Notes under the pieces: generated by a model
The model's input: the letters and a program-made list of their open reading frames with translations, nothing else
Database searches by the model: none
Told to the model about the DNA's origin: nothing
Program-made: the position numbers and the translations under genes
Shown here: one piece after another, positions 27,801 to 51,800 of the stretch
How the letters are laid out: the number at the start of each line of letters is the position of its first letter
How positions within the stretch are numbered: position 1 is the first letter of the stretch
Assembly (NCBI RefSeq): GCF_037042905.1
Contig: NC_087257.1
Span: 23,064,001 to 23,128,000, forward strand
Reading direction: 5' to 3'
Length of the DNA stretch: 64,000 nucleotides
DNA from: Lytechinus pictus
Lineage: Eukaryota

Positions 27801-30800
27801 TACAGTCTTGGACTTGGAGATCTAAAGTAATTTGGCAATCATCATTAAATGAAACGATTACCAACACAGTCAATACCATCCCTTACCCCTCTGAAACTTC
27901 TTCTCCACTACAAACTAAATGCAAGTATGTTATCCTGGAATCTATACCTTCTTTTCCTTTCACCGTCCGACTAATAGAGTGGACAATTCGACTGATTGAA
28001 TCGTGTACGTGATGCATTTATCGAACAGATGTTAATCCGGTTAGAACATGTGGAAAACGTTGATCAAATTTCTCCAAAAGTAAAATACAACATCGCATCA
28101 ATCGGCAATTGCAAGATGTTTTTCTCAGGTTAAGTATTTACTTTATCGGAAACTCAGGAAACCACATGGAAGTGCACACGGTAGATTACGTTAGGTTGTG
28201 AAAGGACTGATTGAGGTGTTAAAGAAGTTCTTGATAACTATGATCATGGCGGTATATTAGAACATGGACCTATAGGAGGTAAAAGGCGGTAAACCCTGCC
28301 CCCTCATATACCTTAAAGAGCACCTTGCATATCGATATTCGATATCGATAATAAAATCATGCATTCTGCTCTCGAAATAATACCAGCGAGTTTACCTTAA
28401 CGACAATAACTTATCTTGTTCATTATACAAGGTTTTCTTATATTTCATACTGATGACTATGATGATTACTCTTGAAATGATGAGAATAACTACGAGCATT
28501 TCAAATAGCTTAAAGTAAAATGAAGCGCATTATTTCCCCTTTCCATCTCCCTCCATTTTTCATCCCTTCTCTTTTGTTCCTCTCTTTCGTCCCCCCCCCT
28601 CGACGTCCCCCCTTTCTCTCCTCCTTCTCACCCCCCTCTCTCTATCCGTGCCATCCCCTCATCCTCTCTTGATCTCCCTCTACAGCTCCTCTATCCCCCC
28701 CCCTCTCTCTCTCTCTCTCTTCTGATACTGACCATGGCCTTATGGCACTAGATTTCAGTGACCTCAATGTTATACGACCATTATAAAACCCTCTCGGGCA
28801 TGAGAAGATAACTCGACCCGGATTCCTCATTCACCTTGATATGAGACCAGGAGGCCTGTTTCATAAAAGATTTGCAACTGTTGTAACTTTGCCATAATGG
28901 CAACTACCATGGTAACAGGGCTCAGCAGCCAATTAGAATCAAGGTTTCCATAGTAGTTGCCATAATAATGGCAAAGTTACAACAGTTGCAATTTCTTTAT
29001 GAAACGGGCCCCACGATAGGACCGTTGCGCAAAGAGCTTTGCGATTAAACGTAACAAAAACAAAATCAATCGCAAAAACGTGCGTTTCATTGGAAATTAA
29101 AAAGCGGTTATTTTTTGGAGGTGCCTTTGATTATACAACTCATTCTGAAACGGGGCTCAAGAAGGGGGAGGGGTGAAAAGTCCGATTGAGTATTCTTGAC
29201 ATGGAGAAAAAACATTACTCTTAATGTTATTGAGGTTAGAAGGCATGGAATCATCTAAATAAAAGGATCGACACAAACAGAAAAATGAGAAGCAAGGTAT
29301 GGGGGGGGGGGGGTGAGGTGGGAATGTGAGAACCGGGTGAGAACATGCAAACGAAGGTGTGAACTGGTCAAACTGGTCACTTGATTAGAAGAAAAAAATG
29401 AATGGAAGAATAAAGAAAAGCTGAGAATAATTTGTACTGTTTTAGGGCAATAAAGTTCTTGACAGGGACAATCGGAATTTGTAGTTTTAAATCATGCAAT
29501 TTCTTGAAGGACACATATAGACGGCCTTTCATTCAATTTCAAAATATTGTTGCTCTACGGCGGCCGTACGGGGAGTCGAAAACAGCCGTTTTATTAATTT
29601 TTATTCAAACCATCTTTGAAGCTGGTACAAATTTTTTTTAAACGGCTGTTTTCGACTAGCCGTACGGCCGCCGTAGAGCAAATGTGACCAAGGTATAACA
29701 GCTCCCTTATACGTTGAATCGTTCTTCAAGTACGATTATTTTCTCATACAACACTCAAAACATTCTCAGTTTCCTTCCAGACTATTTTCCTTATCCGCTT
29801 CGTTAAATTGAACTTCCCATGGCATTAATGTGATCAAGACATTTTAACAGAGTCCCTTGATACTAATGTAAACTCATGTTTTCAACATTTTGTTTTGGGA
29901 TACTATTTCACTGGGATAGCAATCGTTTAGTCCAGGACTGCTGCACTTTTATAACGGATATATATTTAATTAATTTCCGCAGAGGATAAACACTGATCAA
30001 GACACAAGTTATTAAGATTACTGTGTTCAGATGTTCAGGAAATTCATTTCCAGGGGGGAGGGAGTCATCATTTTCAAAGATTTATATGTTTCCCTTGGAA
30101 AAGTAATTGAGAAAAGTCACACGATCGTGCTATCAAAATTAATTCACAATATCATCACAATCGTAATCCACATCGGGTTCTCAGATAAAGTAATGCTCGT
30201 TTTCTCAAATCGGAATTAATTCAAACTCCTGTTTGAAGTTGTGGTTTAACTTGAGCTACGGCTTTTCTGTGAAACAAATTAAAGTACAGGTTCAATTCAT
30301 CAGCTCAAATCCACACTCAAACCATGGACTAGTAGGTCCATGCTCAAACCAAGAAAAAATATGTAAAATTATTGTGTTCACCATTAAAATATGAAGAAGA
30401 GTATGTTAAACAATAATTACGAAACATACAATGTAAATTTTTGAATAAAATTTTCAACTGCAGAATACGAGTACACTCCAAAGGGTTTATGAAACCCAAA
30501 ATATAATACCACATAGTATCATTGATTAAATTTCACTGATCAAAATAAAATAAAAATGAGGCAAAACGGTTTCCTATTTCTCATGATATGCCAAGTCAAA
30601 GTTATCAATATTTAGATATTTGAAAGACCCGTGGAGGTCGCCATCTTGCTCAAACTCCCCATATCTTCGTGGGGGGTTGTGACGTCAGCAACGTACAACT
30701 CGGTGTCTGATCTAGCGCGCGCTTGTGATATATTGCTAGTGGTGGATAACACATGGGACTAAGCTGATCAGGATGGTTTACTGCCAGGCGTTTGGCTGCC

Positions 30801-33800
30801 GAAATCGGTCAGGAAAGGGCGCAAAATGCAGCTTTTACCGCATTCCCGATCCGGAGAAGAGGCCAGAAATCTCTAAAAAATGGGTGGCTGCACTAAAGGT
30901 AGAGAAATACAACAAGCCTTCCTACAAAATCACGAGAATTGATGTTGTTTGTAGCGAGCACTTTACCGAGGACTGCTTTGAGAAGAACGTGATAGAGTTG
31001 CCTGGGAAAGCTACCCCAAAACGACTGAAATTGGATGCTGTCCCTTCAATTTTCCTCCATCATGCCCCCCAGCCGAAAGTCCGGGAAAGTACGGAGAAGA
31101 GATTGGCAAGGATAGAAGCTCAAAAAGTAAGTATAATGATTTTTTTCCTGTTTTGTCGCTTGTATGTATCTTTGCACTGCACTGAGGTGGCACGACGATC
31201 GTCTCAAGCAACGTCAGTCAGTCGCGTCGGTATACAATACTCGGCCTCGGCAGGTCTACCGCGCTACCATGGCCGTGCCATGGGGAGGGTGAGGGAAAGC
31301 CTCGGCATCCTCGCCGACATATTGCTGCAGCTGCACAGTGCACATGCACCCGTCCCGAGCTGAGGCTGTGCCCTGCGGGGACAAGTTGCTCACTACATCG
31401 TATCCCCGATTATTTAGTCAAGAAGTAAGACTTACATGTAAAACGGTGTTGAGAAACAGGCCTCAGTCAGTCAGTCATGCCTAGTTAGGGACAGGGTAGG
31501 CTGGCGCTTTGTAACTTAGAATCTTAGGCTTGGCTTTGTATCTTGGTCTCGTTTTGTATCTTAAATTTAAAAGCTCCAAAACAGTGGAGGGATCATTCTA
31601 AGTCTAAGTAAGAGAGAGAGAGAGCTGCCTACCGGCAGAATTAGACAAGACTCTATTCTAAAAAAGTAAATGTGAATAATTTTGACTGTTTTTGTTAATT
31701 TTCATACCGGTACCAATGCAATGGCAAGATACTGGTACAGATTTTGAAGAAATTTGCGAGGCCAGCGTAGCCTTTATAACATTTATACTATAGGCCTACA
31801 TCATACACAATTACATGTACATGTATAGTACTCGCACTAATGCAAGGTTAGTTGCACTAATGCCAACGGGCCTAGATTTATATTAGTGAAAACTAAGAAC
31901 TGAAGTTGTTTTTGTTGTATTATTTTAATAATATTATCTCCTCCATGTCCATGTTAATAAATAAGTGTGATATCTTAGCATGGTTTTATTTTTGCAGTAG
32001 TAAGGTCCTCCTAATTTTAGATTGCATTTACATGTAATTCCTGATGTTATTGGATTTCATATTAAATCAGTACAGGCATTTTAAGCATACTGTCTTGTTG
32101 AAGAATTACATTACAAATTCTTTACAGTATTCAGGTACATGTAATTTGTTTTGCTTTTTTTTTTCTATGTTGTAATTTTATATTTTTTGAGAGAGAGGGG
32201 GAGGCCACAAACTGTAAATGGGATTTTGATTACCCGGTACACACACACAAAACCCCTGGCCGTAATGTTTATGTTCACTGTACTTAATGCGAGAGCTAAT
32301 GTGTTCGGGTCTTTTAATGGTCCGCCCCGCAGTCCACGTCTGCCCCGTTTCAATTTTTTGATAACTTGTAATTCAACAATCCTTTAACAGATCAACTAAC
32401 TTCAAACTAGCCTTGAGGACTCCATGTCTGATATTTCTTAATATTTTGACATAAACTTCTTCAGACATAGAGCTTTGAACCACCGGCCATGAGACACATG
32501 TACAAAGATGGATTTCCCTAGGAAATCCATAGTTAGAGGGTTAAATCGGTTCGTAGGGGTGAATTTTATTTATGAACCTTCATGCGCCTAATGCGTATAA
32601 AGGAATAAAAAAAATTCACTATATATAAAAATAAGACGTTTCTTTATAACAGACCGATCGCCTGGAGATCCCTCAATCCATTTGTCAACAAAGCAAATAC
32701 AATACAGCGTGACCCTTGAACCGCTTCGTTATGAGGTACATCCGATTAGCGATGCTGTTTTGAAGAACAATTTATAGATAAAAATTATTATTTCACAAAT
32801 ACTAACATTTAATACATGATTATAAATAATTAGTATACAGTAATAATACTAATTTTTTATAATCACGTATTAAAAATAATAATTTGTATCTATAAATTGT
32901 CCTTCAAAAAGGCATCGGGGGGAGGTAGGCCATCAAGTTTTCTGATGTATGATACCTTACAAATTGATAACATACGATAGGGTAACTTGGATATATCATA
33001 ATACCAATAATCTATAATTTTATGTTTCAGTATATCCAAACAGTCTTGTCAGCACCAACCAGTGGAAATGATGAACAAACTTTTCCGAGTAACATCCAAT
33101 CTACACGTACATGCACCTCTGCTTTTGCATCTCCTGCACCGGTAAGAATATTACACATTTCATTGGAAAAAAATATGGGGAGTTATATGTACCTTTTGCC
33201 CCTATCTTTTAACTTCCATGTATAATGCCCATGAGTCTTGAAGTTGCCCCACATAATGGTGGTTTCGTTGCACTTTTTTTCAATGTTCATGGGGTTTTAG
33301 AATATGTCAGTTGAACATAGAGATCTTGTCATAAAATTGGTATCATTTTAAAGCTAGAAATAAAATGTATACCCTGTCATTTTTGAAAAACTAGCGCAAT
33401 AGCACATAAATTCATGACACTGTGATTGATAGAGCAAGACATGGCGAGATTGGTTAAGGGGGTGGGGTACATGCGAGTCTGTGAAAGTCACATTTCATAT
33501 TTTAAACATAACTGGTATACCGGGGGCTAGAGGCTTTATTTTGGTTTCATTTTAAAGCTTGAAGTGGGTAGTATATACATCTAACACTCTTCACAATTCA
33601 TTTCAATTATTGAATAATTTTAATTAGCAATGAATTTAAAAAAGAATTCTACAGAATTTTTTTCTCAAAAATTCTTGATTGTTTGTGCTAAATGGAGATG
33701 TATGAAATTGGTAAAATAAAACAAGGGTCGTTAGAGGTGGTGGAAGCTGTGCAAATTACATGCATGATGTTAGTCACTACATGATGTATTTCATTGTTTT

Positions 33801-36800
33801 TTCTCGTGTGAAATGAGGTTTGTTTACCCATGTACATGTAAAAGTACATGTAGATATAGGAAAAATACATTTTGCTTTAATATATTTATTATAATGCACC
33901 CAAGGATTGTGGAATCACTAAATTGTCAGAGAAATTACATGTACATGTACATTGTAATAAGTGAGTCATATGCACTGCACACAGAAACGTATGTCCAATT
34001 TATGGGACTGCAGACAAATGTTTATTTAGCTGATATATGTCATATTTTGATTTTGTCAGGACATCTGAAGATAAATCATTTGCAGTCCTGCTTTGCCGTA
34101 ATATTCTCCCTATGTAAACTTAAGTTGTTACGTTTATTTTTTTAAAATACATTTAACGCTATATATGTTATTTAAACTGGTGGGGTTCAGATAAAAACCT
34201 TCCCCCAAAATTGCTGAAATGTCGCATTTAATATCGTTAATCCAGGATACAGCCAGTAATTTTCCTATTTTCCCTGACTTTAGTTTTGTGTAGTTGGAAA
34301 CAATCTACAAAATGAAAAATATTCCCTTCTTTCTCAACTCTGAAAGAGATGAACTACATGTACATGTACACGTACCATGTGTTGCTCATTTTCTGGACTT
34401 GAAAAATAAAAATCCTATCAATATCACCTTCAAGATAGATTGGTAGTGCATTATGGGTAAAGGAAAACTTGATATTGGAGTGGTGCTTTTTTTCAAGTGG
34501 AGAAAATGAGCCCAAATGCATAAATGGATTCAATGTTAATGATTCAAGGACTTACATTTGGCTTATTCTTTGGACAGCTCCAAGGTAAATGAGTGACATT
34601 CAGAAACAAATTTTAGCTTATACATGTACAAACAATTATTTGCAAAGAAATGTTACCTGACATTAGTTGCTGAAACCCACTTTTCAAAATAATAACATTT
34701 GTTATTTTGATCCCCTGATTTAATGAGATATGAATATTCATGAACATGGTTACATTGTGATGTAAAATTGACATTGCATATTTGAAGAGAAAACATATTG
34801 GTCAAATTCTTTGAACTTTAAATGGCTATCACAATTTTGAGTTATTGATTGGATTATATGTTGTTCTAGCTTTAATATGCTGCATTACATCAACAAATTT
34901 GTGGACGGTATTTTTCATGTAAAACATAAACGCATACCCAGTTACGGAGTGACATCCGAAATATTCACACAAAGGCAACGTGAAATAAACTTATACTTTA
35001 AAATTTTTCTCTTGATATGATGTAAAATGATGATCTTCAGATTATCCAAAGGAACATTTTAGCAAACAAGCAATAGTTTTCTCGTAAATAGAAATTCATG
35101 TACAAAACAATACATGTAGTCCCATGTGTAGAATTGTTTGTATGGATTAGATTTTCTTATAAGGAGATGCATAAGAAAAAATGACTTTGATTAGAAAAAA
35201 ATTGATCCATATTTGAAATAGAGCCAATTAAATTTCTTGGGAAATGTCCACTTTTGCTTGGAATTGCCCCTTTGGAATAAAATGTAAGTGTAGGACTTAA
35301 GGTCTATTAAATAAGAATCTTATAGTTTGTACAGCCCAATTTTTTTGTGGTCCCACATGTAGACTTCCATGTTTATCTTGAGTGACCTCATCTCAAAGTA
35401 CAGAGTCAAGAAAGAAGGGAATGATAGAATGAACTATGATAATCATTTTTTGGATGTAAAAGTGTGAAATTTCATCAACTTTTGTGGGGAGCTCTTTTTG
35501 TTTCAAGGGGAAGTTAACCATGACAGAAAATTTATTGTAAAAATAGCAGAAATGTGATAAAAAATATTGCTGAAAGTGTGAGACAAATCCATCAAAGGAT
35601 AAAAAAGTTATTAAATTTTATTTGTTTGAATTGTGACGTCATGTGCAAACAGGATTCTTACCTCGCAAATGGTAAATAATCAATGAAATGTCATTTTCTC
35701 AGAATATTGAAAATGATTTTTACTGCACAATTTGTGTATCAATAGACATATCACTTCACACTGATCATGAAAGGAAACGAACATAAATCTTCAAGAGCCA
35801 GTAAAAAAATTAAATAAATGCATTTTATATTACGTAACACATAGGGCAGCTTCTTGTTTATGTCAGAAACCAAAAACTTCAATTAACGAAATCTTTGAAT
35901 AGATTTTCCTCAAACCTTCAATATTTTTTATTATTCTGCTATATGTAGAACTAACTTGTCTTCAGGGTGAACTTGCCCTTTAACTTCTGTTAAAACGGTT
36001 GTCACAATAGATGAAAGTTCATGCCTGTAATGGTTGTTTGAACAGCATTTAAAGGTCAAGTCCATCCCAGAAAATGACGATTTGAATAGAGAATAATCAA
36101 ACAAACATGATGCTGAAAATTTCATCAAAATTGGATGTGAAATAAGAAAGTTATGACATTTTTAAGTTTCGCTTATTTTTCACAACACAGTGATACATGT
36201 AAGCACAACTTACAACAACAGTGACATGCAAATGAGAGTCGATGATGCTCCTCACTATTTCGTTTGTTTTTTTATTGTTTGAATTATACAATATTTCATT
36301 TTTTAAAGATTTGACAATAAGGACCAACTTCATTGAACCATAAAGTATTAAACAATGTTAATTGCACGTGTTCAGGGATGAATTAATTGTTGTTTCACAC
36401 GACAACAGGGATGCATAAGTACATGAAGATGCTTTTTTTTCCATGTGTGATTCCAGTGAAATACAATGATTTTATTGACATTCTTTATTCTCTTTGTTGT
36501 TCTATACAGTCAACCAATTCTCATCCAACTAATGACGAGCTTCGAGAGTCTGCTGAAAAACTGCACATTCCTTCATCCCTATCAAAGGTTTGTCTTTAAA
36601 AAAAAACAATAAGCAGTGTATGTACACTAAATTCCTAGTTCAATGGAAATTTCAGTTATTTGAGAATTGTAATGAGAAAGGTAAAAATTGTGTCATGATA
36701 TCATGTTACAGTTGTCTGTATTATATTTCTTTGTTGTTGTAGCATATAAAAGATGGGTTTTTTTTGCATTGCACCATTACTATTATTAGGAGCTTTATCA

Positions 36801-39800
36801 CTTTCACAGTTCATTGTTTATTCATATTTTTGCCACATTCAATTCCTAGTTCAATGGAAATTTCAGTTATTTGAGATATGTGATGAGAAAGGTAAAAAAA
36901 TGTGTCATGATATCATGTTACAGTTGTCTGTATCATGTATCATATTTCTTTGTTGTTGTAGCATATACAAAATTGTTTTTTTTTGCATTGCACCATTACT
37001 ATTATTAGTAGCCTATCACTTTCACAGTTCATTGTTTATTCATATTTTTTTCCACATTTTAAATACTACAGCCAACACAATCTTATCCAGCCCGTAGCAA
37101 GCGTGAACTTACTAGCGATGAAGAACTCACTCCTTCATTCCCTATAAAGGTAAAACTTCTTATCAGTGTACACGCTCTTGAATTAATATAAAGTGGACTA
37201 ATTCAAAGAAGGGGGGAGGGGGTCTTCTGAGGTGAGGTTAGAACATTGAATACTTTATTACCAAATTATTATTGTCGTAAGGGAGAATCGGTTGGGTACC
37301 AGAAAGATGCTCCTGTACTAAAGCTTATCTGTTATTAACCAGCTTCATATTAGAAATGTGACACTTTGCAGTGTAGCTTGTCAAAATCAATTTTATAATT
37401 GAATGATCTAACATGTACTTTATTGTAATCCTTACAGGACCACCTTTCGCTACAATCTCGGCCTCGTAAGAAGCGCAGACGAGGATCTAAAAAGAAGATG
37501 TGCTCCGATAAGGTAATATTCCCTTAATTTTAATTATGTTGACTAATAAAATGTTTGATGGAATCACAAGGGAAAATAAACTAATTTTCTTCAGTAATTT
37601 CCATGTGGAATCATATTTCAAATTGGAATTCTTACATGAATGTGTCTTAATTGGATTCATTTTCAAAAGTTACATTCTGGGGTAATATTTTCATACAATT
37701 TGTTTTCAGAGAGCATAGAATTTAGTTATTATAGTAAGACATTCTCTGTCCAAAAGAGCACTTGGATTTCATCAATGTGCTGAAGTACACTTGGATAGTG
37801 ATTAACCACACATTTAATGAACATCCTTGGTTTTCTGTCAAAAGAGCTGAGCAAATTGTGAGTTTGTTGGGAATGCAACATCATGATTTGAATATTTATA
37901 TCAAATTTAATTATCTATGAAGACATGATTGAAATAAATTGAATAAAGAGAATTTCTGGCATTCATTATACTTGTACGTGTGCACAAGTTTCCTCCCGCA
38001 TTAAAATGATCTGAATGGTGGAACTGTGGGCAATTTTTCTAAAATTTTACCTCTAAATTTTGTTGATTCAATAAAAGAATATATCTATCTTAGTAATTGC
38101 TATATGTTTTTGTTACTTTATTTTTGTATGATAACATCAATAATTATAATTGTTAGTATAATATTAGTGATAGAAGTATTAGCATTGCTGCTGCTACTAT
38201 TACTAATATTGGCAGCTATTTTTAATAACTTTTAATTATCAACATCATTGTAAATAGTACGTTCAGAGTTTGTGCTATTGTTATCTTGATTATTAGTTTA
38301 CAAGTTTAGGGAACTAATCTATGATTCCATTTTCTTTTCAGGAAAGAACCTTCCAATCTTCAGACTCAAGCACACAGACATGCCTTGAAGACATTGATGA
38401 CAATGGACTGAGGGAGGAGAGCACACAGTGGCCTCCAGACTTTGATGCTATCAACATTGACCATAATTACCCACAAACACAGTTGCCAGTTGTGTGGCCA
38501 TGTTGTGCAAAAAGTAAACTCAACAGCAAGACTCAAGGGTCATCACCTTTGACCGAGCCATCGATGGCTATGCCTCCACCTCCACCACCAAGCCAATCAC
38601 CATCTGGCTCCCCACCCACTGCACCTGGACCACCATTACCCAGCATGACCGTAACTACCTCTCAAGAATCGGTATCAATATCACCTAGACCTTCACCAGA
38701 ATCAGAATTGCACGTTCAGCCCAGTGAAATATTGACACCTCTTTTGTCTCCCAAGAATTCTTCGATGTCAGATGAATCATCTTCTGATGAACTAACATCG
38801 TCGCAAGATAGTTCTTCTAGTTCAACTTCCCTTTACAACACCGGCACATCAAGTGACCCTTCTTACCTACCTTCTGATGAGGAATCCTCCAGCTCAGAAC
38901 CAGAAGATGAGCCACCACAGCTTCGCTATGTGAAGGAAAAGAAGTTTCTAGTGTTTGAGGAATGTCTTGACACTTTGTTATATTCACAGAAGTGTGCTAA
39001 GTGTGGTTCTGGACAGATATGCGAGATAAAGAAGTACTGTGTGGGCACAATGCTTGTAGCAGACCTCACATGCTTTTGTGGAAACGTGTTCAAATGGTCT
39101 TCACAACCGAAGATTGGGAAACAACCAGTTGGCAACCTTCTGACAGCGTCTGCAATACTTCTCAGTGGCAAGACTTATGAACAGTTGCGATTCTTTGCGG
39201 AACTTCTCAACCTCCAATTCCTATCCCACACCACCTTCAACTCCATCCAAAATGCAGCCCTCCTCCCCACCATAAATCACTTTTACGAAGAAAACATCTC
39301 TTCTGTAAAAAGGGAAGTAAAGTGTAGAAATGACCAGGTAGTCTTGTGCGGAGATGGGAGGTGTGACAGTCCCGGATACAACGCCAAATACTGTACATAT
39401 ACATTTATCGACATGAAGTCCAACAAAATCCTGGACATGTCCGTTGTCCAGGTGACTGAGGCATCAAGCTCTGTTGCCATGGAGAAGATCGGTTGTCAGC
39501 GGACATTAGAGAAGATATTACAGGACGGCATCAACGTTGCGACAGTAGCAACCGACAGGCATACGGGAATCCGTAAGATGCTCAGGGAACTTTACCCGTA
39601 CATCATCCACCAATTTGATGTCTGGCATCTCACCAAATCCATAGGAAAGCGGCTAATAACAAAGTCCAAGCAGAAAGAATGTAGTGAGCTTTGTCAGTGG
39701 ACCCAGGCCATAAACAATCATATCTGGTGGGCTGCTCAACATTGTAGAGGAGATCCGGATTTGATCATTGAAATGATCCAGTCGATCACCCATCACATAT

Positions 39801-42800: not shown

Positions 42801-45800
42801 CATGTGTTCAATCGATTACAGTGCACTTGAACTTGGTAGTGAAAAGTGTTACATGAATGTAAAGTTTGACAGAAAATAGTTTAGTGTGTTAAAAAAAAAA
42901 ATCAGTCACACCACACACTTGTGTGACTACATTTTGGTCTGAGACTGCCAAATCGAAGCGTTATCTTTCTGTGAATGATATTCTCAAAAAGTGCACCTTA
43001 GAGAATACACAACATGAGATTGGCAATTGTCACTCATGTGATTCTAACAGAATCTATTAGAATATAAACTGTTTTTAAATGTAGAATTTGATACTTTGTA
43101 TTATAATGATTCCTACGGAAATTGCTCAATAATTTGCAAAACAACTGTCTGTTTTTCTGTCAGGCCTTTCCCCATCTCTCTGTTATATTACAACACCTGG
43201 CCACACGTTCGTTTACAAACTTATTTCAGCTTGCTGTTACTCGGTTTTCACACATTTTCCTTATTGATTTGCAAATCTTTTTTCTTGAAATTGTTGCTCC
43301 ATCTGACTAGGCAACTTTGCCTCCGAGTAAGAACCGCCTGTTTAATTTGTACATACATTCAGAAGATTATTTTTTAATATATATAATGGTATTAGTATTT
43401 CTGTTGTCAGCCTCAAGGTACACAGAAGAGTGAACTCATATTACTCTTGGTTATGTATGTAATCTATGTTGACTAGAGATGATATGATGTGCCCTTTTTC
43501 CATGAGAGGACAAAATTTGTCATACTTATGTGTTTTTTATTGGAAATATTCTGTTTTTTATACATTTACTTTGTTTTGATGAAATTACATTTTTTGCTAT
43601 GGTAAAATTAGTTTGACAAGAAGTGATGAATAAATCTGTACTAAAATGTTCTTTTTAGTAGATATGTGAATTGTAAATTTTAGTTGGGACAGCTCCCCCA
43701 TTTAGTTATTGTGCCTGTAATGTTTAGTTTTACAGATTGTCACCAATGCCTTTCCTTATGGCCAGTGATTGAATGATAGAAGGCATCATGCCCAGTCCAA
43801 CTTGTGGGAAGTTGAACTTAGATCATGTGTACTTAAAAAATTCTTTGCTCCTAATTTTCCATGTAGTTGTATGCATAATTACTACAACTTTTTAGAATTT
43901 GTAACACTCTATAATGAACCTGTCAGGGTTTGCTTGAATTCTCATTTAACTGTTTCTCTGCATTTTCTTGTTTTATATGTAAATTACTGTTGAACATGTA
44001 AGGGAGTAACTAATTTTCTCAATGAATCATTTCCGGCTACTTCAACATTCCCAATCTCAAATTTTGTTTTAAAACATTGTGTTTCTCATGCAGTTTAGTT
44101 TTTCCCCCTTTACTGATGAGTGACTGCCACTTTTCCTTCTCCCTATAAAGAATGAATTGTATCTGGGAGGGGGGGGGGTAAATTTAGCTGGAACATGTAT
44201 TCTGTAAGATTAAAGGATGGTGATTGAGGAGTATGTGCATGTATATTCTGTCTTTTTGTGGTTTTGATGGGTTTCCCCCAGTTAATATAATTACTGCACT
44301 GTTTGTGAATTTTACAAAGTAAAAGTTTTTTTCATAGTATTGCTATGTGTTCTGCCTTGTTTGTCCTTTTTTCTGGTGATGGTTTACATTCATTATCACA
44401 TTTTAGTGAGGAATAGTGCATAGAAATATAACCTGAAGCATGTTAAAAAGCAATGAAAATTATAACAGTAATAAAAAAATTATAGACATTAATGATTAAT
44501 TATTGCTGCTAATAGTTATGTTGACAAAAAAATTCAAGCACCAAACTTTTTGATCAGTACTCAAGGAGAGAGGGCCAAAAATAGCTGAAGATGTAAAAGG
44601 GAGAAGAGCAGAGTGAGCGAGAGAAGGTGAGAGTGAGGGAGAGAGATGTAAACTGGCGAAGTTGAGCTCATCTTGTTATGGTAATATGGAAATGTGTACA
44701 AGTTGAAATAAAAGGTCAATTCCACCCAACATCAAGTTTATTCATTCTATTTGGAACAAAGGGGCTACATGAAGAAGGTCCTGAAAGTCTTGCAAAATAC
44801 ATGTACACAAGAAAGATATTTCCAAATTATGATGACATTGTACATGTACAGCAGTTTTGGAGAGCAGTTATAAAATGACATAGTCATAAAAAAATTGGCA
44901 TCAAGAGACTGCGAAAAAGGTTCTCAATGTCACACCCTTAATGTATATGTTTTAATTACCTTCAATTTTATATATATTTATATGCGACTTGTATATGTTG
45001 GGATCAACTTGATGTTGGGGTGGATTTACTTTCGAACTGCACCATTGGAAAAAAAAAATGCTTACAAGGGCTTACCCTGTGACCTGCTTACTCAAATGTT
45101 CGTGTTATCAGTTTACACGTGTCCATGTATGTTGAAATACATATGAAGAGCTTGATTCCAAAAGGGGCTAAATGCACTTTTGACCAAAATTGGTCTTGGG
45201 TAAAAAATTTTACCCAAAGAGTGGGAAGGTTGGTAAAATTTTTTGGTAAAATGTTTTGTTCCAAAAAGAGCTAAATCCAAAACAGTTTTGTTCCATAAGG
45301 AGCTTAATCCTTTACCAGGTCAATTACTTTTCATATAGTCATGCATTTTAATTTTTAGGTACATGATGTGGATACAAGTGCACACCATCAGTGCATATTT
45401 TGTTGAAAATTACAGAATTTTACAATTCTCATATTTTTTTATTTAGCTGCTTTTGGAATAAAAGATCAAAAGGTAGCTGTCTGTAGAAAAGGTTTTTTTT
45501 CTTTTTAAAATTATAAATGGATAAACATCCAAAATGATGTAAAATGTACTCTGATTACGTGTTGCTTGTTAAATTTCCAATGTTGAAATGGACAAAAATG
45601 GGCATTCAACCATTCCAAAAGGAGCTAAATGCATGATTTTCTTTTATTATTAATAGATATTGAATGCTATATTTTTTCAAACATGATTTAATTCATTTGA
45701 GATGACAGCACTATCGTATATATAAATACTGTATATATATGAAGAGTTTAGTTGCAAAGGGGTTAGGTCCACTTTTTCCATTCCAAGAAAAACCATATTT

Positions 45801-48800
45801 TTTATTCTCACTGCAATACTCTGAGAAACTAAATTGTCATGATGTACTACTCTATCATGTGAACATAAAATTGGGTATAAAAAAATCTACCCATCTTCAA
45901 TTTTTTCTATATATTCTTTTAAAAATTATCATTGTGGACCTAACCCCTTTTGCAACTAAACTGAAATGAATCCAATCTATTTTGATTAAATAGGTGATTT
46001 TTCTTTGCCACTTTTATTCACGTTTTTATGTGAATTTCAAATTTTTGTTGTTTTCATCAGAACGACTAAAATTTAGAGGATTTGAGACAGAAAACAATAA
46101 AAATTTATGAACAATGGACCTAACCCTTTTTGACAAATGAGCTCTTTACAGCTCATTTGTCAAAAAGCTTTAGAGCTCATCAGTTTGCAAAAGGGGATAG
46201 GTCCACGCCAAGAAAATTATTTTTTTAATTCTCCCATATTGCAATATTCTTATGCGAAACTAAATTTTCATGATACCCTACCATGAGAAAATAAAATGGG
46301 GTATAAAGAAATCCACCTGTCTTGATATTTTTGTAAACTATTCTTTTCCAAAAAAATTCTGTGTGGTCCTAACCCCTTTTGCAACTAAACTGAAATGGAC
46401 CTAACCCCTTTTGAAAAAAAAGTGATTTTTCGTTGCCATTTTATATCACTTTTTAATGGGAATTTCAACTTTTCTTTGGTATCATCTTATAGAGCTACTA
46501 AAAATCTATACATTGAGAAAAAAAAATCAAATTTGATGAAAAATGGACCTAATCCCTTTTGCAAGTGAGCTCTTCATATATCAAAATAAAATAGCAGTGG
46601 ATCAGGGAAAATGGTGAATTAAAAATCCTTGATTTACAGAATAGCTCCAAAAGTGGATTTAGCTCCTAATGGAATAAAATTCTTCATATCCATGTACACA
46701 AGACTACGTCCTCTTTCTCACACAGGTATGATTGTTACCCAACAGTCTACATAATGCACATCAATATGTTTTGAGTCAAATATGTTTTGAGTCAAGTATT
46801 TTTCAAATTTTATTAACATAAAATGACACACATATATGATAGAAATTGTAACTTTTTTCTACAATAATGATTTTAATATACATGTAAAACAAATTAAAAT
46901 GGCATTTATTTACATGTACAGAAACAACTGAAAATAAATTGGTGATTGATAATCCTAGCCCCATGAGTATGGAACAGTTCACAAGCACTTTACAAAAAAG
47001 GAAAATAAGCAGTTATCTCTGTTTTAGTGACTGTTACTAAATGTCCGATATATTCTAAAAGTGTGTTGTGCACCTTTTCATTCAAAGACTAATGATACAG
47101 TACTTAGTGTGTGCTGCATTTTCTAAACGATACTACAAAATTAAAAAAGAAATTTGATCTTCATTTTTTACCATAAGCATTGTAATAACAGGTTGCCATT
47201 ACAGCAAATCCATTTCAAAACACACATGCATGCATAATGTAGGTCGCATGTATGATGTACATTCTAACTCGAGTGTGTCAATTTAAATTAAAATTGCTTT
47301 ACAAAGTAATACAAGTTAGTGTACCAACATCTATTACAAAATGCAACATTTCATTCCTATTTTAATATATTCCAACTGTACATGTATTTGTCATAACAAT
47401 GGCAGTGCAACCATATATATTTTTTCTGCATAATCATATCTCATCTGAGAAATATGTCGAAAATAAATGTAATTACTTCAAAGAAAAAAAGGAAGGGACA
47501 GAGTGCCTGAACTGCATGTCATTTTATCTGCAAAATAGAATGACTGAGGCAAGGCTGACCACCCACCCACCCATTTCCCTAAAGATGCATTAAAATTTGG
47601 AGAAAAAAAATTATTAACATAAACATATATGAGGGGTGAGCAAGATTTGCAACAAATATGACCAGTCACCACTGAATACTGGTTTAAATGTATATGTATA
47701 TCAAGGTTTTGACAAAGGTGAACAGCCATGCAACATTTAAAACCTCCCAACTGGAGCAATTGACCTTGCATTCAACAACAACAACAAAAAGCTTTATAAA
47801 CATAATTTTTCTCACTAAAATGTGTATGCCAGGAGCCAATGTGAAACAAATAATTTTCACAATGTCTTTTTTTATATGGTTCCAGACAGTCATGTGTAAA
47901 TTGACAATTTTTTCTCTCGTAGAAACAAGACAATGCTATTCTGCACTCAAGTTATGGTAGTTTTCTTGACCTTTAAAAAAATAAAAACTTACATGTACAT
48001 GCAGCCTTCAACAATATAATGTATCCGTTGTTAAAAGTACAACATGTAGACAAATCCAGAGAGAACACCTTACAGGTACATGTAGAGTCAATAATCTTTC
48101 ATAATGCAATGTACATGTACAACCTTTTAATTTTTTTATAAACATTGAACTGCATGCAATGAATGACCTACTCCCATTGTGTTGCCAAAACCTTCTTTGT
48201 CAAATTTGTCATATAAAAACGTAATGCATAAAACAAACATAAGTAAATCTTACATGTACTGCAATACAGAAAACAAATTAAAATGAAAGATTATAAGAAA
48301 GCTAACGTGGGCATCCTCCAGCTTATAATTTGGAAATTCAAACTGTAAATTTGCCCTTCTGTCAAGTTCTGTGTACCGTAAGTTCTTACATGCAAGTACC
48401 AGGTAATTTCTTTCACACAATATGTTTTCATATTACAGAATTTAATGTTCTGTGTATTACGAATCAGACAATGGATTCAAACTTTAAAAACATGTACATG
48501 TATTCTTAAATTACAAAAACTAGACACATGCTCAAACATTATGGTACAGTAGTACATGATGTGAATTCTGCATGTACAATGTATGAACCGCCATTGTCTC
48601 TAAAGCTCTAGATATTCCTGTCTGACCCTAAAATTTTAGAATGAATGCAAGAGTTATATGTACATGTAATTTCATTTTTAATCCTGGAAAGGTGTAAAAT
48701 CACTATTTTGATGTAATTCATTATACAGTATACAAAAATATATATGAAAACTTCAATTACATGTAGACACATTTACAATAAAATGAATAGGCATTTGATA

Positions 48801-51800
48801 CAGCAAAGTAGGAAAATAATGTATGGACATACATTATGGGACATTATACTGTACATGTGTACTGCATACTGAATCTTTTCAACATGCACTCATTATCAGA
48901 GTGAAATCTCATGAGCTAAAAGAATGTTGCTACAAAATGTTTTCAGACTTATATAGCATTTGTTTTGTTCTACATACTAGCATTATGTTCAATGATGTGA
49001 TTTTATTCTTCAAAAAGCTTTAGTTTGTCAGTTTTTAATGCTATTTTCTGAATTACAAAGTGGGAAGAAAAAAATCACTTTCAAAGCTCCCATTTGATTC
49101 CCAACTTCATCCCATGACAGCTTATCACAAAATTGTCTTAATGTACACATATTAACTGAGAGCAAAAGAAGGCAGGAGTTTCATTTGGGATATAAGAAGG
49201 GTCATATAACTGTATGCTGTAGGCTAGCAAAAAGGTTCATATTGCAAAATGTTCTGGTACCATCTGCTGCTCACCATCATCGCCAATACTAAATCCTGTA
49301 TAAACACCGTCCGCTGCTGGGTAGATGGAATGAATTTTCAAGACGGCGCAAGATGGTATCACCTTCCTCACACCCCTTCCCAGAAGACCATGAATCCAAT
49401 AGGTGAAGAGACGATATGCAGAGTATCTGTAGGATCTGGTGGGGAAAGATGTCCAAAATAGAAAAAATTATTAACAAATTGTAGTATTTAAACATTTGTA
49501 AAAATAAAAAAAAATTTCTAAAGTGCATTGATTTTCTACAGCACATGATCTTAAGAGACTTCATCTTGGTGAGTCAGCCCTTGTAATATTTCTTTCATGT
49601 TGGTCATGCGTGTAATGTGATTTTGATTGTTTGATTACGCCTACGGTATTCAATTTTGACCTGGTGTGACTACAGGTGGACTGGACAAATCCCCATCCGG
49701 GCTAGCCAGGCGGCTTCTAGAGAGTAAAAATCATTTATTTCCGACATTTCTGCGCCATCGGGCAAGTCTCTTCTCTCTTGTCATATTTTTCTCATTTTTT
49801 TGATGAATTCTTGTTTAAAAATAAAATCGATGGCGCAGAAAGGTCGGAAATGAAGTTGCATCCCATGTATACCCAGTTGATGTGTGTCCGGACGATCAAT
49901 TTTAGAAAGTCATTTGGAAAAATTTACAAGGCCAAGGGAAGTTTTATCAATTTTTAGTACAAAATGTCAGGAAATATTATAGAGAACAAGAAGATGATTA
50001 CAACTATTGAATTCATATTTTTAGTGTAATCCAAAGACAAAAAAGAAGGCTTCAAAAATATAAAGTGTCCGGACACCCGACCCCCCATCCTACATGATTT
50101 AGGGCTAACGTTAACATTAGATCTTTTAGAAGTAGAAATCTCGGGGGAGAAAGTTTCAGGTTTTGGCGGCCTACATGCACGTGAATGGATAGGAATACCT
50201 GGCTTCATTGGGAGTAATCTTACGTCAGTAAATGATTTTTACTCTCTAACACTAACAGTTAGAGGCCGCCTGGCTAATCCAGACGTCCCCCAATTTCTAC
50301 TGTACTGTACATGTATATGAAAGTCACAAATGATTGAATTGATTGTTGCAATGATTTCTCTGTAGGCCTGTGCACCAAACTATTTGGATTTTGGACATAA
50401 ATGTCAATAAGAATTTTATGCTATCTTACTCATTTTCAAGGATCCTTGGCAAATTGCCTCGGTGACCTCGCTTGTCCAGGCGGGCAACAAGCGCAGTTCT
50501 CAGCACCGCACGCTCCAGGCAAACTTTTGAAAAATCTTCATTATCTATAATACAGTTCACAGACGGAGACAAAAATTGGCGGCAGTTTCCTATCTCGTGG
50601 CAACATATGCACTCTATTTGCGTTGGCATCACTCTACAATTTCCACAACTGCACCAGTTATCGTTGTCCAGTCTATCTGGTGGTGGTGGCGGTGGCTCAA
50701 CATCGGCTCCGTTATTGTCTCTCTCGCTGCTGCAACCCGTGCGCCGACGTTCCTCTGCTCGTTGAGCAATTTCTTCGGCCGAGTATTGCGGCTCGAAGTC
50801 GTAGGGTCTCGGGCCTTCCATTTCACTCAGTACAAACCGTCCGCGATTGCCGCGATAAGTTTAGTTTTATTTAAAATCAAAGGTAACAAATAATGAAAAT
50901 GTTAGATAAACAGAAATAAAGCACGATAGTCAATCAGTCAAAACTTCCAACACGATAACTCGGTTCAGCCTTCCGTACGCGGTGTTTGCAGCTAGCTAGC
51001 TAGCTAGCTAGCGGTAAGCTTTGTCAAATTGGCCAATTTGAATATCGTAAATAAATGTGTAAAAAAAACTCATCAAAGCTCATCAATTTGTGTTTTTATA
51101 CCATAAAATAATTAAAATACCTTATTTATAATATTTTTAAGAGTATTAGATCTATATTTTATTTATTTTTGGTAGAAAGGTATCTATATTATGCAAACAT
51201 CGTGGCGGTTTCAACCCGTATAGCTATGCACATTGAAAGTGCTACCGAGACAGTTGTACGTCGATGACGTCACGAATTTGAACGAACCCCGAAACAATGG
51301 CGACCTCCATTCAGAGACTTCGAACCTGAAAAAGCCCAACTTTGAAGAGGTGGTACTCGATACTGGGAAATCGGATTTGGGTATAACTGGAATCATTTTG
51401 ATTGTCATGTTCTTATCAATGATACTATGTGGTATTATATTTTGGGTTTACGTCACCTTTAGGTATATAGACTTGCCCTTCTAAAAATGGTTACACTTCG
51501 TAATTCCGAAGGTTCTTTATTCCGAAGGTTCGTAATTCCGAAACACGTAAATTGCCTATACCTCGATGTTCGTTAATCCGAAAACGTAAAAGGATTCGTT
51601 AATCCGAACATTTGTGGCGTTATTCCGAAGGTTCGCTATTCCGAAGGTTCGATAATCCGAAAACGAAATAAGGTTCGATGTTCCGAAGGTTCGTTAATCC
51701 GAAAACGAAATAAGGTTCGTTGTTCCGAAGGTTCGTTAGTCCGAAAACGAAATAAGGTTAGTTAATCATTTAGTTTTCGGACTAACGAACCTTCGGAATT

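What the first reader, a model, noticed from the sequence alone, without database searches (positions are those of the whole stretch)
30482..51458. About 21-kb two-gene transposon (THAP-DDE transposase + P2X7-ballast-like partner) inside a GALNT intron
Seen: a perfect 35-bp inverted repeat about 21 kb apart brackets two convergent, spliced genes with no stops or frameshifts, and the element fills most of a 29-kb GALNT intron. Established: AGG..CCT termini, TTAA preference, a THAP-DDE transposase and a second accessory gene (KolX) characterise the Kolobok superfamily. Inference: this is a complete two-component system. It is unusually large and gene-like, with 6 introns in total, about 9 kb of non-coding sequence between the two stop codons, and at least five nested MITEs that all avoid exons. 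That pattern suggests purifying selection on both ORFs, either in a long-lived active lineage or during domestication. The ORF track shows it only as unconnected fragments.
Basis: partly seen in the sequence, partly recalled or inferred. Interest (0 to 1): 0.9.

Follow-up and report, generated by a model that had tools for sequence, protein, structure and literature searches.

The report
Two-gene Kolobok transposon in sea urchin
This is a complete, recently mobile 21-kb "Kolobok" jumping gene of the sea urchin Lytechinus pictus that carries a transposase gene and a second gene related to the tail of the P2X7 receptor; the kind was described in 2022, so this is a well-preserved new example and not a new kind of element.

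Summary
A perfect 35-bp inverted repeat (30492-30526 / 51415-51449) brackets two convergent, intact, spliced genes inside a 29,051-bp intron of a GALNT gene on the minus strand.

The reading as a Kolobok two-gene element also holds. It fits the published Kol0 lineage: a THAP-DDE transposase plus KolX, which has the P2X7 ballast fold (Kojima & Bao 2022).

- **Mobility.** A second 20.85-kb copy on another chromosome is about 99.9% identical at aligned bases. It has perfect 44-bp inverted repeats, a TTAA duplication and a paralogous empty site.
- **Other copies.** L. pictus also holds a dead 17.6-kb copy. L. variegatus holds a colinear copy in a different gene. At least 130 short derivatives carry TTAA duplications.
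- **Selection.** dN/dS between the species' copies is 0.16 for the transposase and 0.24 for KolX.
- **Expression.** RNA contigs from two studies splice four of the five transposase introns exactly as modelled.
- **Domestication.** Not supported, because no two copies share an insertion site.

Two details are new. The long inverted repeat is derived: the left 44 bp is an inverted copy of the right end, whereas the ancestral repeat is about 12 bp. In the window copy alone, the bases just inside AGG/CCT and both flanking TTAA sites are altered. This is either end-scarring or an assembly artefact.

Verdict: new member of a known kind, of moderate interest.

The parts
30482..51458 (.). Whole Kolobok (Kol0-type) autonomous element, 20,977 bp
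   Evidence: Colinear at about 99.9% identity of aligned bases with the second copy G000:C6:19092130-19112980. Homology to that copy ends inside the terminal repeats.
30482..30526 (+). Left terminal inverted repeat. The perfect arm is 30492-30526. Bases 30485-30488 deviate from the canonical AGGAGAATG.
   Evidence: In this subfamily the left 44 bp is an inverted copy of the right end. Older copies and the short derivatives carry AGGAAAATGAAAGGATAG... here.
51415..51458 (-). Right terminal inverted repeat. The perfect arm is 51415-51449. Bases 51450-51455 deviate from the canonical CATTCT.
   Evidence: The variant end is unique in the genome.
30773..31126 (+). Transposase exon 1, encoding the THAP zinc finger with its AVPSIF box
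   Evidence: Pfam THAP E 4e-15. GT donor at 31127.
33031..33141 (+). Transposase exon 2
   Evidence: Aligns to P0001. The junction 33141|36510 is seen in RNA contigs.
36510..36587 (+). Transposase exon 3
37072..37149 (+). Transposase exon 4
37438..37512 (+). Transposase exon 5, a basic stretch ([13 protein letters not shown]) that is probably a nuclear localisation signal
38342..40402 (+). Transposase exon 6: acidic/serine-rich linker, zinc-finger-like block and DDE core with DxxH and H2CH motifs
   Evidence: 96-99% of its sampled words are held in RNA runs of two studies.
40339..41221 (+). Tandem array of a 125-bp unit, 7 copies. It starts 64 nt before the transposase stop, and each unit repeats the last 20 codons plus the stop.
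   Evidence: There is about one unit fewer in the C6 copy and about 3 in the C22 and L. variegatus copies.
49237..49435 (-). KolX exon 2
   Evidence: 100% match to P0121 residues 132-196.
50430..50821 (-). KolX exon 1, carrying the Cys-rich blocks of the P2X7 ballast-like domain
   Evidence: Pfam P2RX7_C E 2e-17 for the full protein. PDB P2X7 residues 468-592, E 5e-9.
30679..30700 (+). Subterminal motif containing TGACGTCA, mirrored at 51252-51273 (20 of 22 bases). A second mirrored motif, GGAGGTCGCCAT, lies at 30633-30644 and 51300-51311.
   Evidence: The motifs fall inside the parts retained by the short derivatives.
34569..36411 (.). Nested high-copy repeats in transposase intron 2 (about 34569-35270 and 36047-36411). 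They lie within a 2-kb insertion (34512-36519) that the C22 copy lacks; the L. variegatus copy lacks most of it.
   Evidence: Very high RNA-contig depth here.
45735..46581 (.). Nested MITE-like repeat of about 845 bp in the spacer between the genes
   Evidence: Inverted arms. At least 1,600 candidate copies. Absent from the C22 and L. variegatus copies.
49756..50248 (.). Nested repeats in the KolX intron: a 230-bp unit at 49867-50094 inside a repeat of about 490 bp
25111..54161 (-). Host GALNT intron, 29,051 bp, that contains the element
   Evidence: Donor and acceptor read directly. Flanking exons match Glycos_transf_2.

Best explanation
This is an autonomous DNA transposon of the Kolobok superfamily, Kol0 type, in Lytechinus pictus.

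**Structure (shown).** The two genes are read inward from the two ends. One encodes a 918-aa transposase: an N-terminal THAP DNA-binding finger, a basic exon that is probably a nuclear localisation signal, and a DDE core with DxxH and H2CH motifs. The other encodes the 196-aa KolX protein, a stand-alone P2X7 ballast-type zinc domain.

**Mechanism (inferred).** The transposase binds the terminal AGGAGAATGAAA repeats and subterminal sequences. It cuts the element out and pastes it into TTAA, duplicating that site. KolX acts as a cofactor whose role is not known.

**History (shown).** The lineage grew from about 17.6 kb to 21 kb by taking up nested repeats and expanding a tandem array. The left end was replaced by an inverted copy of the right end, which lengthened the inverted repeat to 44 bp. 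The whole 21-kb unit moved at least once after that. The family also gave rise to more than 100 short derivatives of 0.8-1.35 kb that keep only the end regions.

**The window copy.** It codes for both proteins and a matching transcript exists (the C6 copy has identical exons in the stretch covered, so the source copy is not resolved), but both of its tips and both flanking TTAA sites are altered. It may therefore no longer be able to move (inferred).
For: **Family features**
- The THAP domain matches Pfam. KolX matches Pfam P2RX7_C at 2e-17 and P2X7 structures at 5e-9.
- The transposase core is colinear with Kolobok-1_XT1p and Kolobok-1_BF1p in the published alignment: [25 protein letters not shown], NHxWW and CHTGxxExxH. 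KolX carries the KolX blocks WCxCGxC, MP, ECxCCHE and YRxxTxW..LG.
- Among 12 homologues the invariant residues include D338, D342, D405, D426, H429, H485, H490, C501 and E553; H503 is nearly invariant.

**Mobility**
- The C6 copy is 20,851 bp. It differs at 20 of about 16.8 kb aligned non-coding bases and at 3 synonymous coding sites. It has perfect 44-bp inverted repeats and TTAA on both sides.
- The flanks of the C6 copy are contiguous in paralogous copies of the repeat it landed in.
- The C22 copy and the L. variegatus copy are colinear, flanked by TTAA, and sit at different loci.
- The canonical right end plus TTAA gives 132 hits with at most one mismatch, against 0 for the control pattern. 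Short derivatives with TTAA duplications were read directly.

**Selection.** Between L. pictus and L. variegatus copies, dN/dS is 0.155 for the transposase (0.089 for its core) and 0.237 for KolX.

**Expression.** Contigs in runs X3 and X5, from two studies, join exons 2 to 6 at the predicted GT..AG sites with no mismatch. Word shares are 0.96-0.99 for exon 6 and 0.36-0.50 for the KolX region.

**Literature.** The Kol0 lineage is defined as transposase plus KolX, and KolX has the ballast fold (PMC9587614). Kolobok uses TTAA targets and AGGRR termini, and its transposases carry THAP, DDE and H2CH motifs (PMC6004289).
Against: - No transposition assay or insertion polymorphism was available, so current activity is inferred only from the two near-identical copies.
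- The window copy lacks TTAA flanks (it has CCAA and TTAG) and has altered bases inside both tips.
- KolX splicing and expression rest on the NCBI model and on word shares. They were not checked with laid reads.
- In the two raw-read RNA runs, X21 and X22, this copy is barely expressed. The exon-2 reads there come from a diverged paralogue.
- No tree with labelled Kolobok lineages was built.
Confidence: 0.9

Rival explanations
1. The GALNT-intron copy is a host gene pair being domesticated from a Kolobok element. It is immobilised by its damaged ends and kept by the host for the function of its proteins.
For: The window copy has altered tips and no TTAA, while both ORFs are intact. A matching transposase transcript exists, though the source copy is not resolved. 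Kolobok transposases have been domesticated many times in Xenopus (PMC6004289), and KolX gave rise to the P2X7 tail and probably to Nanor (PMC9587614).
Against: The copy is only about 0.1% diverged from a canonical mobile copy, so there has been no time for host-level selection to show. No orthologous copy was seen: the L. variegatus copy lies in an ABC-transporter intron. The dN/dS signal comes from comparing different insertions, which fits selection for transposition competence.
Confidence: 0.06
2. The two near-identical 21-kb copies arose by segmental duplication or ectopic recombination, not by transposition.
For: The window copy has no target-site duplication.
Against: Homology between the copies stops inside the terminal repeats. 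The C6 copy has TTAA on both sides, and paralogous sequences run uninterrupted across its insertion point.
Confidence: 0.03
3. The 35-bp repeats are ends of two unrelated small elements that happen to bracket two unrelated genes.
For: Many short derivatives of the family exist.
Against: The same gene pair, spacer and ends recur colinearly in three other long copies. The short derivatives carry the ancestral left end, not the 35-bp arm.
Confidence: 0.01

Closest known systems
Kol0 lineage of the Kolobok superfamily (type element Kolobok-1_XT; Kapitonov & Jurka 2007; Kojima & Bao 2022, PMC9587614)
   Same: It uses a TTAA target and has AG... / ...CT termini. It encodes a THAP-DDE transposase with DxxH and H2CH motifs and a second protein, KolX, with the P2X7 ballast fold. 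Both proteins share the conserved blocks of the published alignments.
   Different: The host is an echinoderm, whereas the paper lists Kol0 from vertebrates, annelids, cnidarians and sponges. The element is 21 kb with six introns and an 8.8-kb spacer. Its 44-bp inverted repeat was made by copying one end onto the other.
Full-length XKol elements and T2-MITEs of Xenopus (Hikosaka et al. 2018, PMC6004289)
   Same: These also have TTAA duplications, AGGRR termini and a large family of short derivatives. The first 13 nt of the urchin's ancestral left end (AGGAAAATGAAAG) equal the right end of Xenopus subfamily A4.
   Different: The Xenopus full-length copies listed are 6.8-13.9 kb, against 21 kb here. 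The passages of that paper that were searched do not mention a second gene.
piggyBac superfamily
   Same: TTAA target-site duplication.
   Different: piggyBac termini differ from Kolobok's 5'-RR...YY-3' (PMC9587614), and the ends here are AGG...CCT. The piggyBac transposase is unrelated and has no THAP domain. This element is not a member.
C-terminal ballast domain of the vertebrate P2X7 receptor
   Same: KolX aligns to rat P2X7 residues 468-592, including the WCxCGNC block and a PSC block.
   Different: KolX is a stand-alone 196-aa protein with no channel part. It has the extra ECICCHE cysteine block typical of KolX proteins.

Membership tests
Kolobok superfamily | 4-bp TTAA target-site duplication | tested here: met
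   TTAA lies on both sides of the C6, C22 and L. variegatus copies and of most short derivatives read. The window copy itself shows CCAA and TTAG.
Kolobok superfamily | Termini 5'-RR ... YY-3' (AGGRR in the T2 type) | tested here: met
   Canonical ends are AGGAG / AGGAA ... CTCCT. The window copy keeps AGG...CCT.
Kolobok superfamily | [quoted passage not shown] | tested here: met
   D338/D342, D405, D426-V-W-H429 and E553 are invariant in 12 homologues. The core is colinear with Kolobok-1_XT1p and Kolobok-1_BF1p in Data S5 of PMC9587614.
Kolobok superfamily | N-terminal THAP domain and H2CH zinc-finger motif in the transposase | tested here: met
   Pfam THAP E 4e-15, with an AVPSIF box. H485, H490 and C501 are invariant and H503 nearly invariant. 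The criteria come from PMC6004289.
Kolobok superfamily | Groups with Kolobok transposases in a phylogeny of labelled superfamilies | not tested
   No labelled reference sequences could be loaded into the tools. Only a block-by-block comparison with the published alignment was made. Pfam has no Kolobok core model, and the MULE and ISL3 hits are below threshold.
Kol0 lineage | A second gene, KolX, with the P2X7 cytoplasmic-ballast fold | tested here: met
   P2RX7_C E 2e-17. P2X7 structures E 5e-9. KolX blocks are shared with Kolobok-1_XT2p. The pair is present in all four long copies and in six other families.
Domesticated Kolobok-derived host gene | Single orthologous locus conserved between species, with ends lost | tested here: not met
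   The four long copies lie at four different loci, and three of them have intact ends with TTAA.
piggyBac superfamily | piggyBac-type termini and a piggyBac-type transposase | tested here: not met
   The termini are AGG...CCT. The transposase carries a THAP domain and Kolobok blocks.

The most novel reading that the evidence does not exclude
The C13 and C6 copies form a live two-protein transposition system that can move 21 kb. On this reading the GALNT-intron copy is a natural "wings-clipped" helper. Its tips were scarred, for example by abortive excision and repair, so it cannot move. It would still supply transposase and KolX in trans to the C6 copy and to the family of more than 100 short derivatives. 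That would offer an active Kolobok for bench work and a direct handle on what the ballast domain does in transposition.
Probability: 0.25. Interest if true: 0.55.

Novelty: new member of a known kind. Interest (0 to 1): 0.35.

Why it matters
As far as I know, no Kolobok element has been shown to transpose experimentally, and the role of KolX, the likely ancestor of the P2X7 receptor tail, is unknown.

This locus offers useful material in a sea urchin that can be bred and injected:
- an intact, transcribed gene pair;
- a canonical sister copy;
- defined minimal ends, from the short derivatives;
- a natural end-mutant.

These are the parts needed for an excision and integration assay run with and without KolX. 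The locus also shows that a Kolobok can move as a 21-kb unit. For genome annotation, the two genes are labelled "uncharacterized protein" (the L. variegatus counterpart) and "P2X purinoceptor 7-like"; they belong to a transposon and are not host genes.

Tried and rejected
- **Empty site in the assembly.** I searched the assembly for a haplotig or empty site of the window insertion using both flanks. There is none. The left flank holds only short unrelated repeats, and the right flank runs into an abundant MITE of about 400 bp after 27 bp.
- **Independent junction sequence.** Looking up contigs that encode KolX, or the spurious ORF across the right junction, gave nothing on record.
- **Variant tips elsewhere.** The variant tips occur nowhere else in the genome, apart from one 1-mismatch match to the left-tip pattern that may be chance, so they are not a subfamily signature.
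- **RNA families.** Rfam found nothing in the element.
- **Transposase core.** It has no significant Pfam family and no solved relative by profile search.
- **Earlier notes.** A word search of earlier scan notes for Kolobok found nothing.
- **Raw RNA reads.** Runs X21 and X22 gave almost no coverage of this copy. Their exon-2 reads carry 4-5 differences, most seen in all reads, and splice elsewhere, so they come from a paralogue.
- **Nested MITEs as evidence of selection.** Rejected as weak; dN/dS was used instead.
- **Steps not run.** No complex prediction was run, because I do not claim that the two proteins bind. The L. variegatus GALNT intron could not be fetched without typing a long spliced protein, so that step was left out.
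Full report
**1. The observation.** The window is G000:C13:23064001-23128000 of an 812-Mb assembly. The species is Lytechinus pictus: the NCBI model "P2X purinoceptor 7-like [Lytechinus pictus]" (P0121, 196 aa) is 100% identical to the product of the second gene. The repeat finder returns the reported inverted repeat exactly. It is 35 nt and 100% complementary, at 30492-30526 and 51415-51449, with 20,888 nt between the arms. AGG at 30482 and CCT at 51458 are present.

**2. The host gene.** Minus-strand exons match Glycos_transf_2 (two consecutive pieces, profile positions 1-40 and 39-95), Glyco_transf_7C and Ricin_B lectin twice. This is the domain set of a polypeptide GalNAc-transferase. The donor and acceptor of the interrupted intron were read directly. 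The intron is 25111-54161, 29,051 bp, and the 20,977-bp element fills 72% of it.

**3. The transposase gene.** Aligning the L. variegatus protein P0001 (915 aa, 96% identical over the large exon) to the window and reading the splice sites gives six + strand exons. They are 30773-31126, 33031-33141, 36510-36587, 37072-37149, 37438-37512 and 38342-40402. All introns are GT-AG and phase 0, and the product is an uninterrupted 918 aa.
- Exon 1 is a THAP finger (Pfam E 4e-15).
- Exon 5 is a basic stretch, probably a nuclear localisation signal.
- Exon 6 holds the catalytic core.

**4. The KolX gene.** It has two minus-strand exons, 50821-50430 and 49435-49237, giving 196 aa.

**5. Transcription of the transposase.** In the single read-laying run allowed (33000-38999), a 2,926-nt contig of run X3 and a 2,300-nt contig of run X5 join exons in order. 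The two runs belong to different studies. The X3 contig joins exons 2-3-4-5-6 and the X5 contig exons 3-4-5-6, with the 2-3 joint carried by a separate short X5 contig. The joins fall at the predicted GT..AG sites, and the long contigs carry no mismatch. These runs are therefore RNA, and the gene model is right for four of its five introns.
- If the X3 contig is colinear with exon 1, it reaches about 30584. That is an inference.
- Exon 6 is held at 96-99% of sampled words in seven organism-A runs, and the KolX region at 36-50% in eight.
- KolX splicing itself was not checked with reads.
- In the two raw-read runs, X21 and X22, this copy is almost silent. Their exon-2 reads carry 4-5 differences, most seen in all reads, and continue into other sequence, so they come from a diverged paralogue.

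**6. Near-identical sister copy (C6).** A second copy lies at G000:C6:19092130-19112980 (20,851 bp). It is colinear over its whole length at 99.6-99.7% BLAST identity, gaps included. It differs by 20 substitutions in about 16.8 kb of aligned non-coding sequence and by 3 coding differences, all synonymous.
- It has perfect 44-bp inverted repeats starting AGGAGAATGAAACCC and TTAA on both sides.
- Its two flanks are contiguous in paralogous members of the repeat it landed in, which is a paralogous empty site.

**7. Older copies.** A third copy on C22 (17.6 kb, 84-93% identical) is dead. It has three in-frame stops and a frameshift in the transposase, and the start of KolX was not recovered. In L. 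variegatus, P0001 sits in a colinear element of about 17.5 kb that also carries a convergent P2RX7_C gene of 199 aa. That element is flanked by TTAA and lies inside an ABC-transporter gene, not in GALNT. The four long copies have four different insertion sites.

**8. Short derivatives.** The end regions (about 30523-30729 and 51180-51458) recur in elements of 0.8-1.35 kb flanked by TTAA. The canonical right end plus TTAA occurs 132 times with at most one mismatch, against 0 for the control pattern.

**9. Related families in the same genome.** Six further transposase genes, 49-55% identical, each have a KolX gene 42-55% identical lying 6.6-8.2 kb downstream on the opposite strand. The convergent two-gene layout with a long spacer is therefore conserved across families.

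**10. Selection.** Between the window copy and the L. variegatus copy, dN/dS is as follows.

| Gene | dN/dS | dS |
|---|---|---|
| Transposase, whole | 0.155 | 0.147 |
| Transposase, catalytic core | 0.089 | 0.237 |
| Transposase, linker | 0.44 | 0.064 |
| KolX | 0.237 | 0.156 |

- Alignable non-coding sequence differs by about 0.087 substitutions per site and has many gaps.
The signal comes from comparing separate insertions, so it reflects selection for copies that can still transpose, not host-level selection.
- The "MITEs avoid exons" argument adds little. Exons are 16% of the element, and all nested repeats are shared with the C6 copy, so they predate the last move.

**11. Family assignment.** Kojima & Bao 2022 (PMC9587614) define Kolobok by TTAA duplications, 5'-RR...YY-3' termini and a DDD/E transposase with a C/DxxH motif. 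They define the Kol0 lineage by a second protein, KolX, which they show has the P2X7 ballast fold. Hikosaka et al. 2018 (PMC6004289) add the AGGRR terminal motif and the THAP and H2CH motifs.
- **Ends.** The ends and duplications fit (paragraphs 6-8).
- **Catalytic residues.** Among 12 homologues, D338, D342, D405, D426, H429, H485, H490, C501 and E553 are invariant and H503 nearly so, in exon-6 numbering.
- **Published alignment.** The core shares the published blocks of Kolobok-1_XT1p and Kolobok-1_BF1p. KolX shares the blocks of Kolobok-1_XT2p.
- **KolX domain.** KolX scores 2e-17 against Pfam P2RX7_C and 5e-9 against P2X7 structures, residues 468-592.
- **Conserved terminus.** The first 13 nt of the ancestral urchin left end equal the right end of a Xenopus subfamily.
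- **Not done.** No labelled phylogeny was built.

**12. The long inverted repeat is derived.** The C22 copy, the L. variegatus copy and the short derivatives have only about 12 matching terminal bases (AGGARAATGAAA). Their left end continues GGATAGATTTATT.... In the window and C6 copies the left 44 bp is a perfect inverted copy of the right end, joined at a shared GAT. In the genome search only these two copies matched that derived left arm; every other hit starts just inside it.

**13. Size growth.** The element grew from about 17.6 kb to 21 kb and then moved as a whole. The added pieces are a 2-kb insertion in intron 2, an 845-bp MITE in the spacer, about 0.7 kb in the KolX intron, and expansion of the 125-bp array from about 3 to 7 units.

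**14. Altered tips of the window copy (unexplained).** About 11 of the 26 outermost positions differ from canonical, against about 0.1% divergence elsewhere.
- The left end reads CCAA|AGGGTTTATG where the canonical sequence is TTAA|AGGAGAATG.
- The right end reads ACGTCACCT|TTAG where the canonical sequence is CATTCTCCT|TTAA.
- Both variants are unique in the genome, apart from one 1-mismatch match to the left pattern that may be chance.
- This cannot be neutral decay. It is either repair scarring at both ends, for example after abortive excision, or a consensus error at a heterozygous insertion.

**15. Verdict.** The finding is real and its interpretation is essentially right. The kind of element is already published, so this is a new and well-preserved member. 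Interest is moderate: it is a candidate active Kolobok with all parts defined, in an experimentally tractable animal.

Noticed in passing
window 30482-30491 and 51450-51462: Only in this copy, the bases just inside AGG/CCT and both flanking TTAA sites are changed (about 11 of 26 positions), while the remaining 20.9 kb is about 0.1% diverged from the C6 copy. The variant tips are unique in the genome, apart from one 1-mismatch match to the left pattern that may be chance. This is either end-scarring or an assembly error.
   Followed up: partly
window 30482-30526 compared with L026:9714-9760 and the C22 copy: The left 44 bp of the window and C6 copies is an inverted copy of the right end, joined at a shared GAT. 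Older copies and the short derivatives keep a different left end and only a 12-bp inverted repeat.
   Followed up: yes
window 30633-30700 and 51252-51311: Mirrored subterminal motifs lie about 150-200 nt from each end: GGAGGTCGCCAT, and GTGACGTCAxCxACGTACAACT with a CRE-like TGACGTCA palindrome. They may be transposase-binding sites or twin promoter or 5'-UTR elements. The X3 RNA contig may start upstream of the left one.
   Followed up: partly
window 40339-41221: A 125-bp tandem array starts inside the last 64 nt of the transposase ORF, so each unit re-encodes the last 20 residues and the stop. The unit number varies between copies: 7 here, about 6 in the C6 copy and about 3 in the C22 and L. 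variegatus copies.
   Followed up: partly
window 51486-51899: A very abundant MITE of about 400 bp (more than 1,700 candidate copies) lies 27 bp beyond the right end. It is internally palindromic, with 16-bp and 42-bp TTCGGAA-type tandem units.
   Followed up: partly
G000:C15:21008480-21018886, C29:1011046-1021417, C19:7718469-7728837, C16:1293399-1302298, C1:8178304-8187339, C16:10808434-10817000: Six more convergent transposase + KolX pairs come from diverged Kol0-like families. Three of them (C15, C29, C19) give identical scores, so that family may also have amplified recently.
   Followed up: no
window 33031-33141 (runs X21 and X22): Stranded raw RNA reads cover exon 2 at 8-10x but carry 4-5 differences, most seen in all reads. 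At 33141 they continue into sequence not in this stretch, so a diverged paralogue is the copy expressed in those samples.
   Followed up: no
window 35600-36400: A nested repeat in transposase intron 2 has very high summed contig depth in the RNA runs, so this repeat family is abundantly transcribed genome-wide.
   Followed up: no
L036 (G000:C6:19017098-20353) compared with the C6 insertion site: A 94% identical local duplicate of the C6 flanks lies about 73 kb upstream. It lacks about 80 bp around the point where the C6 copy inserted.
   Followed up: no
window 36630-37058: A 219-bp tandem duplication (2 copies, 90% identical) lies in transposase intron 3.
   Followed up: no
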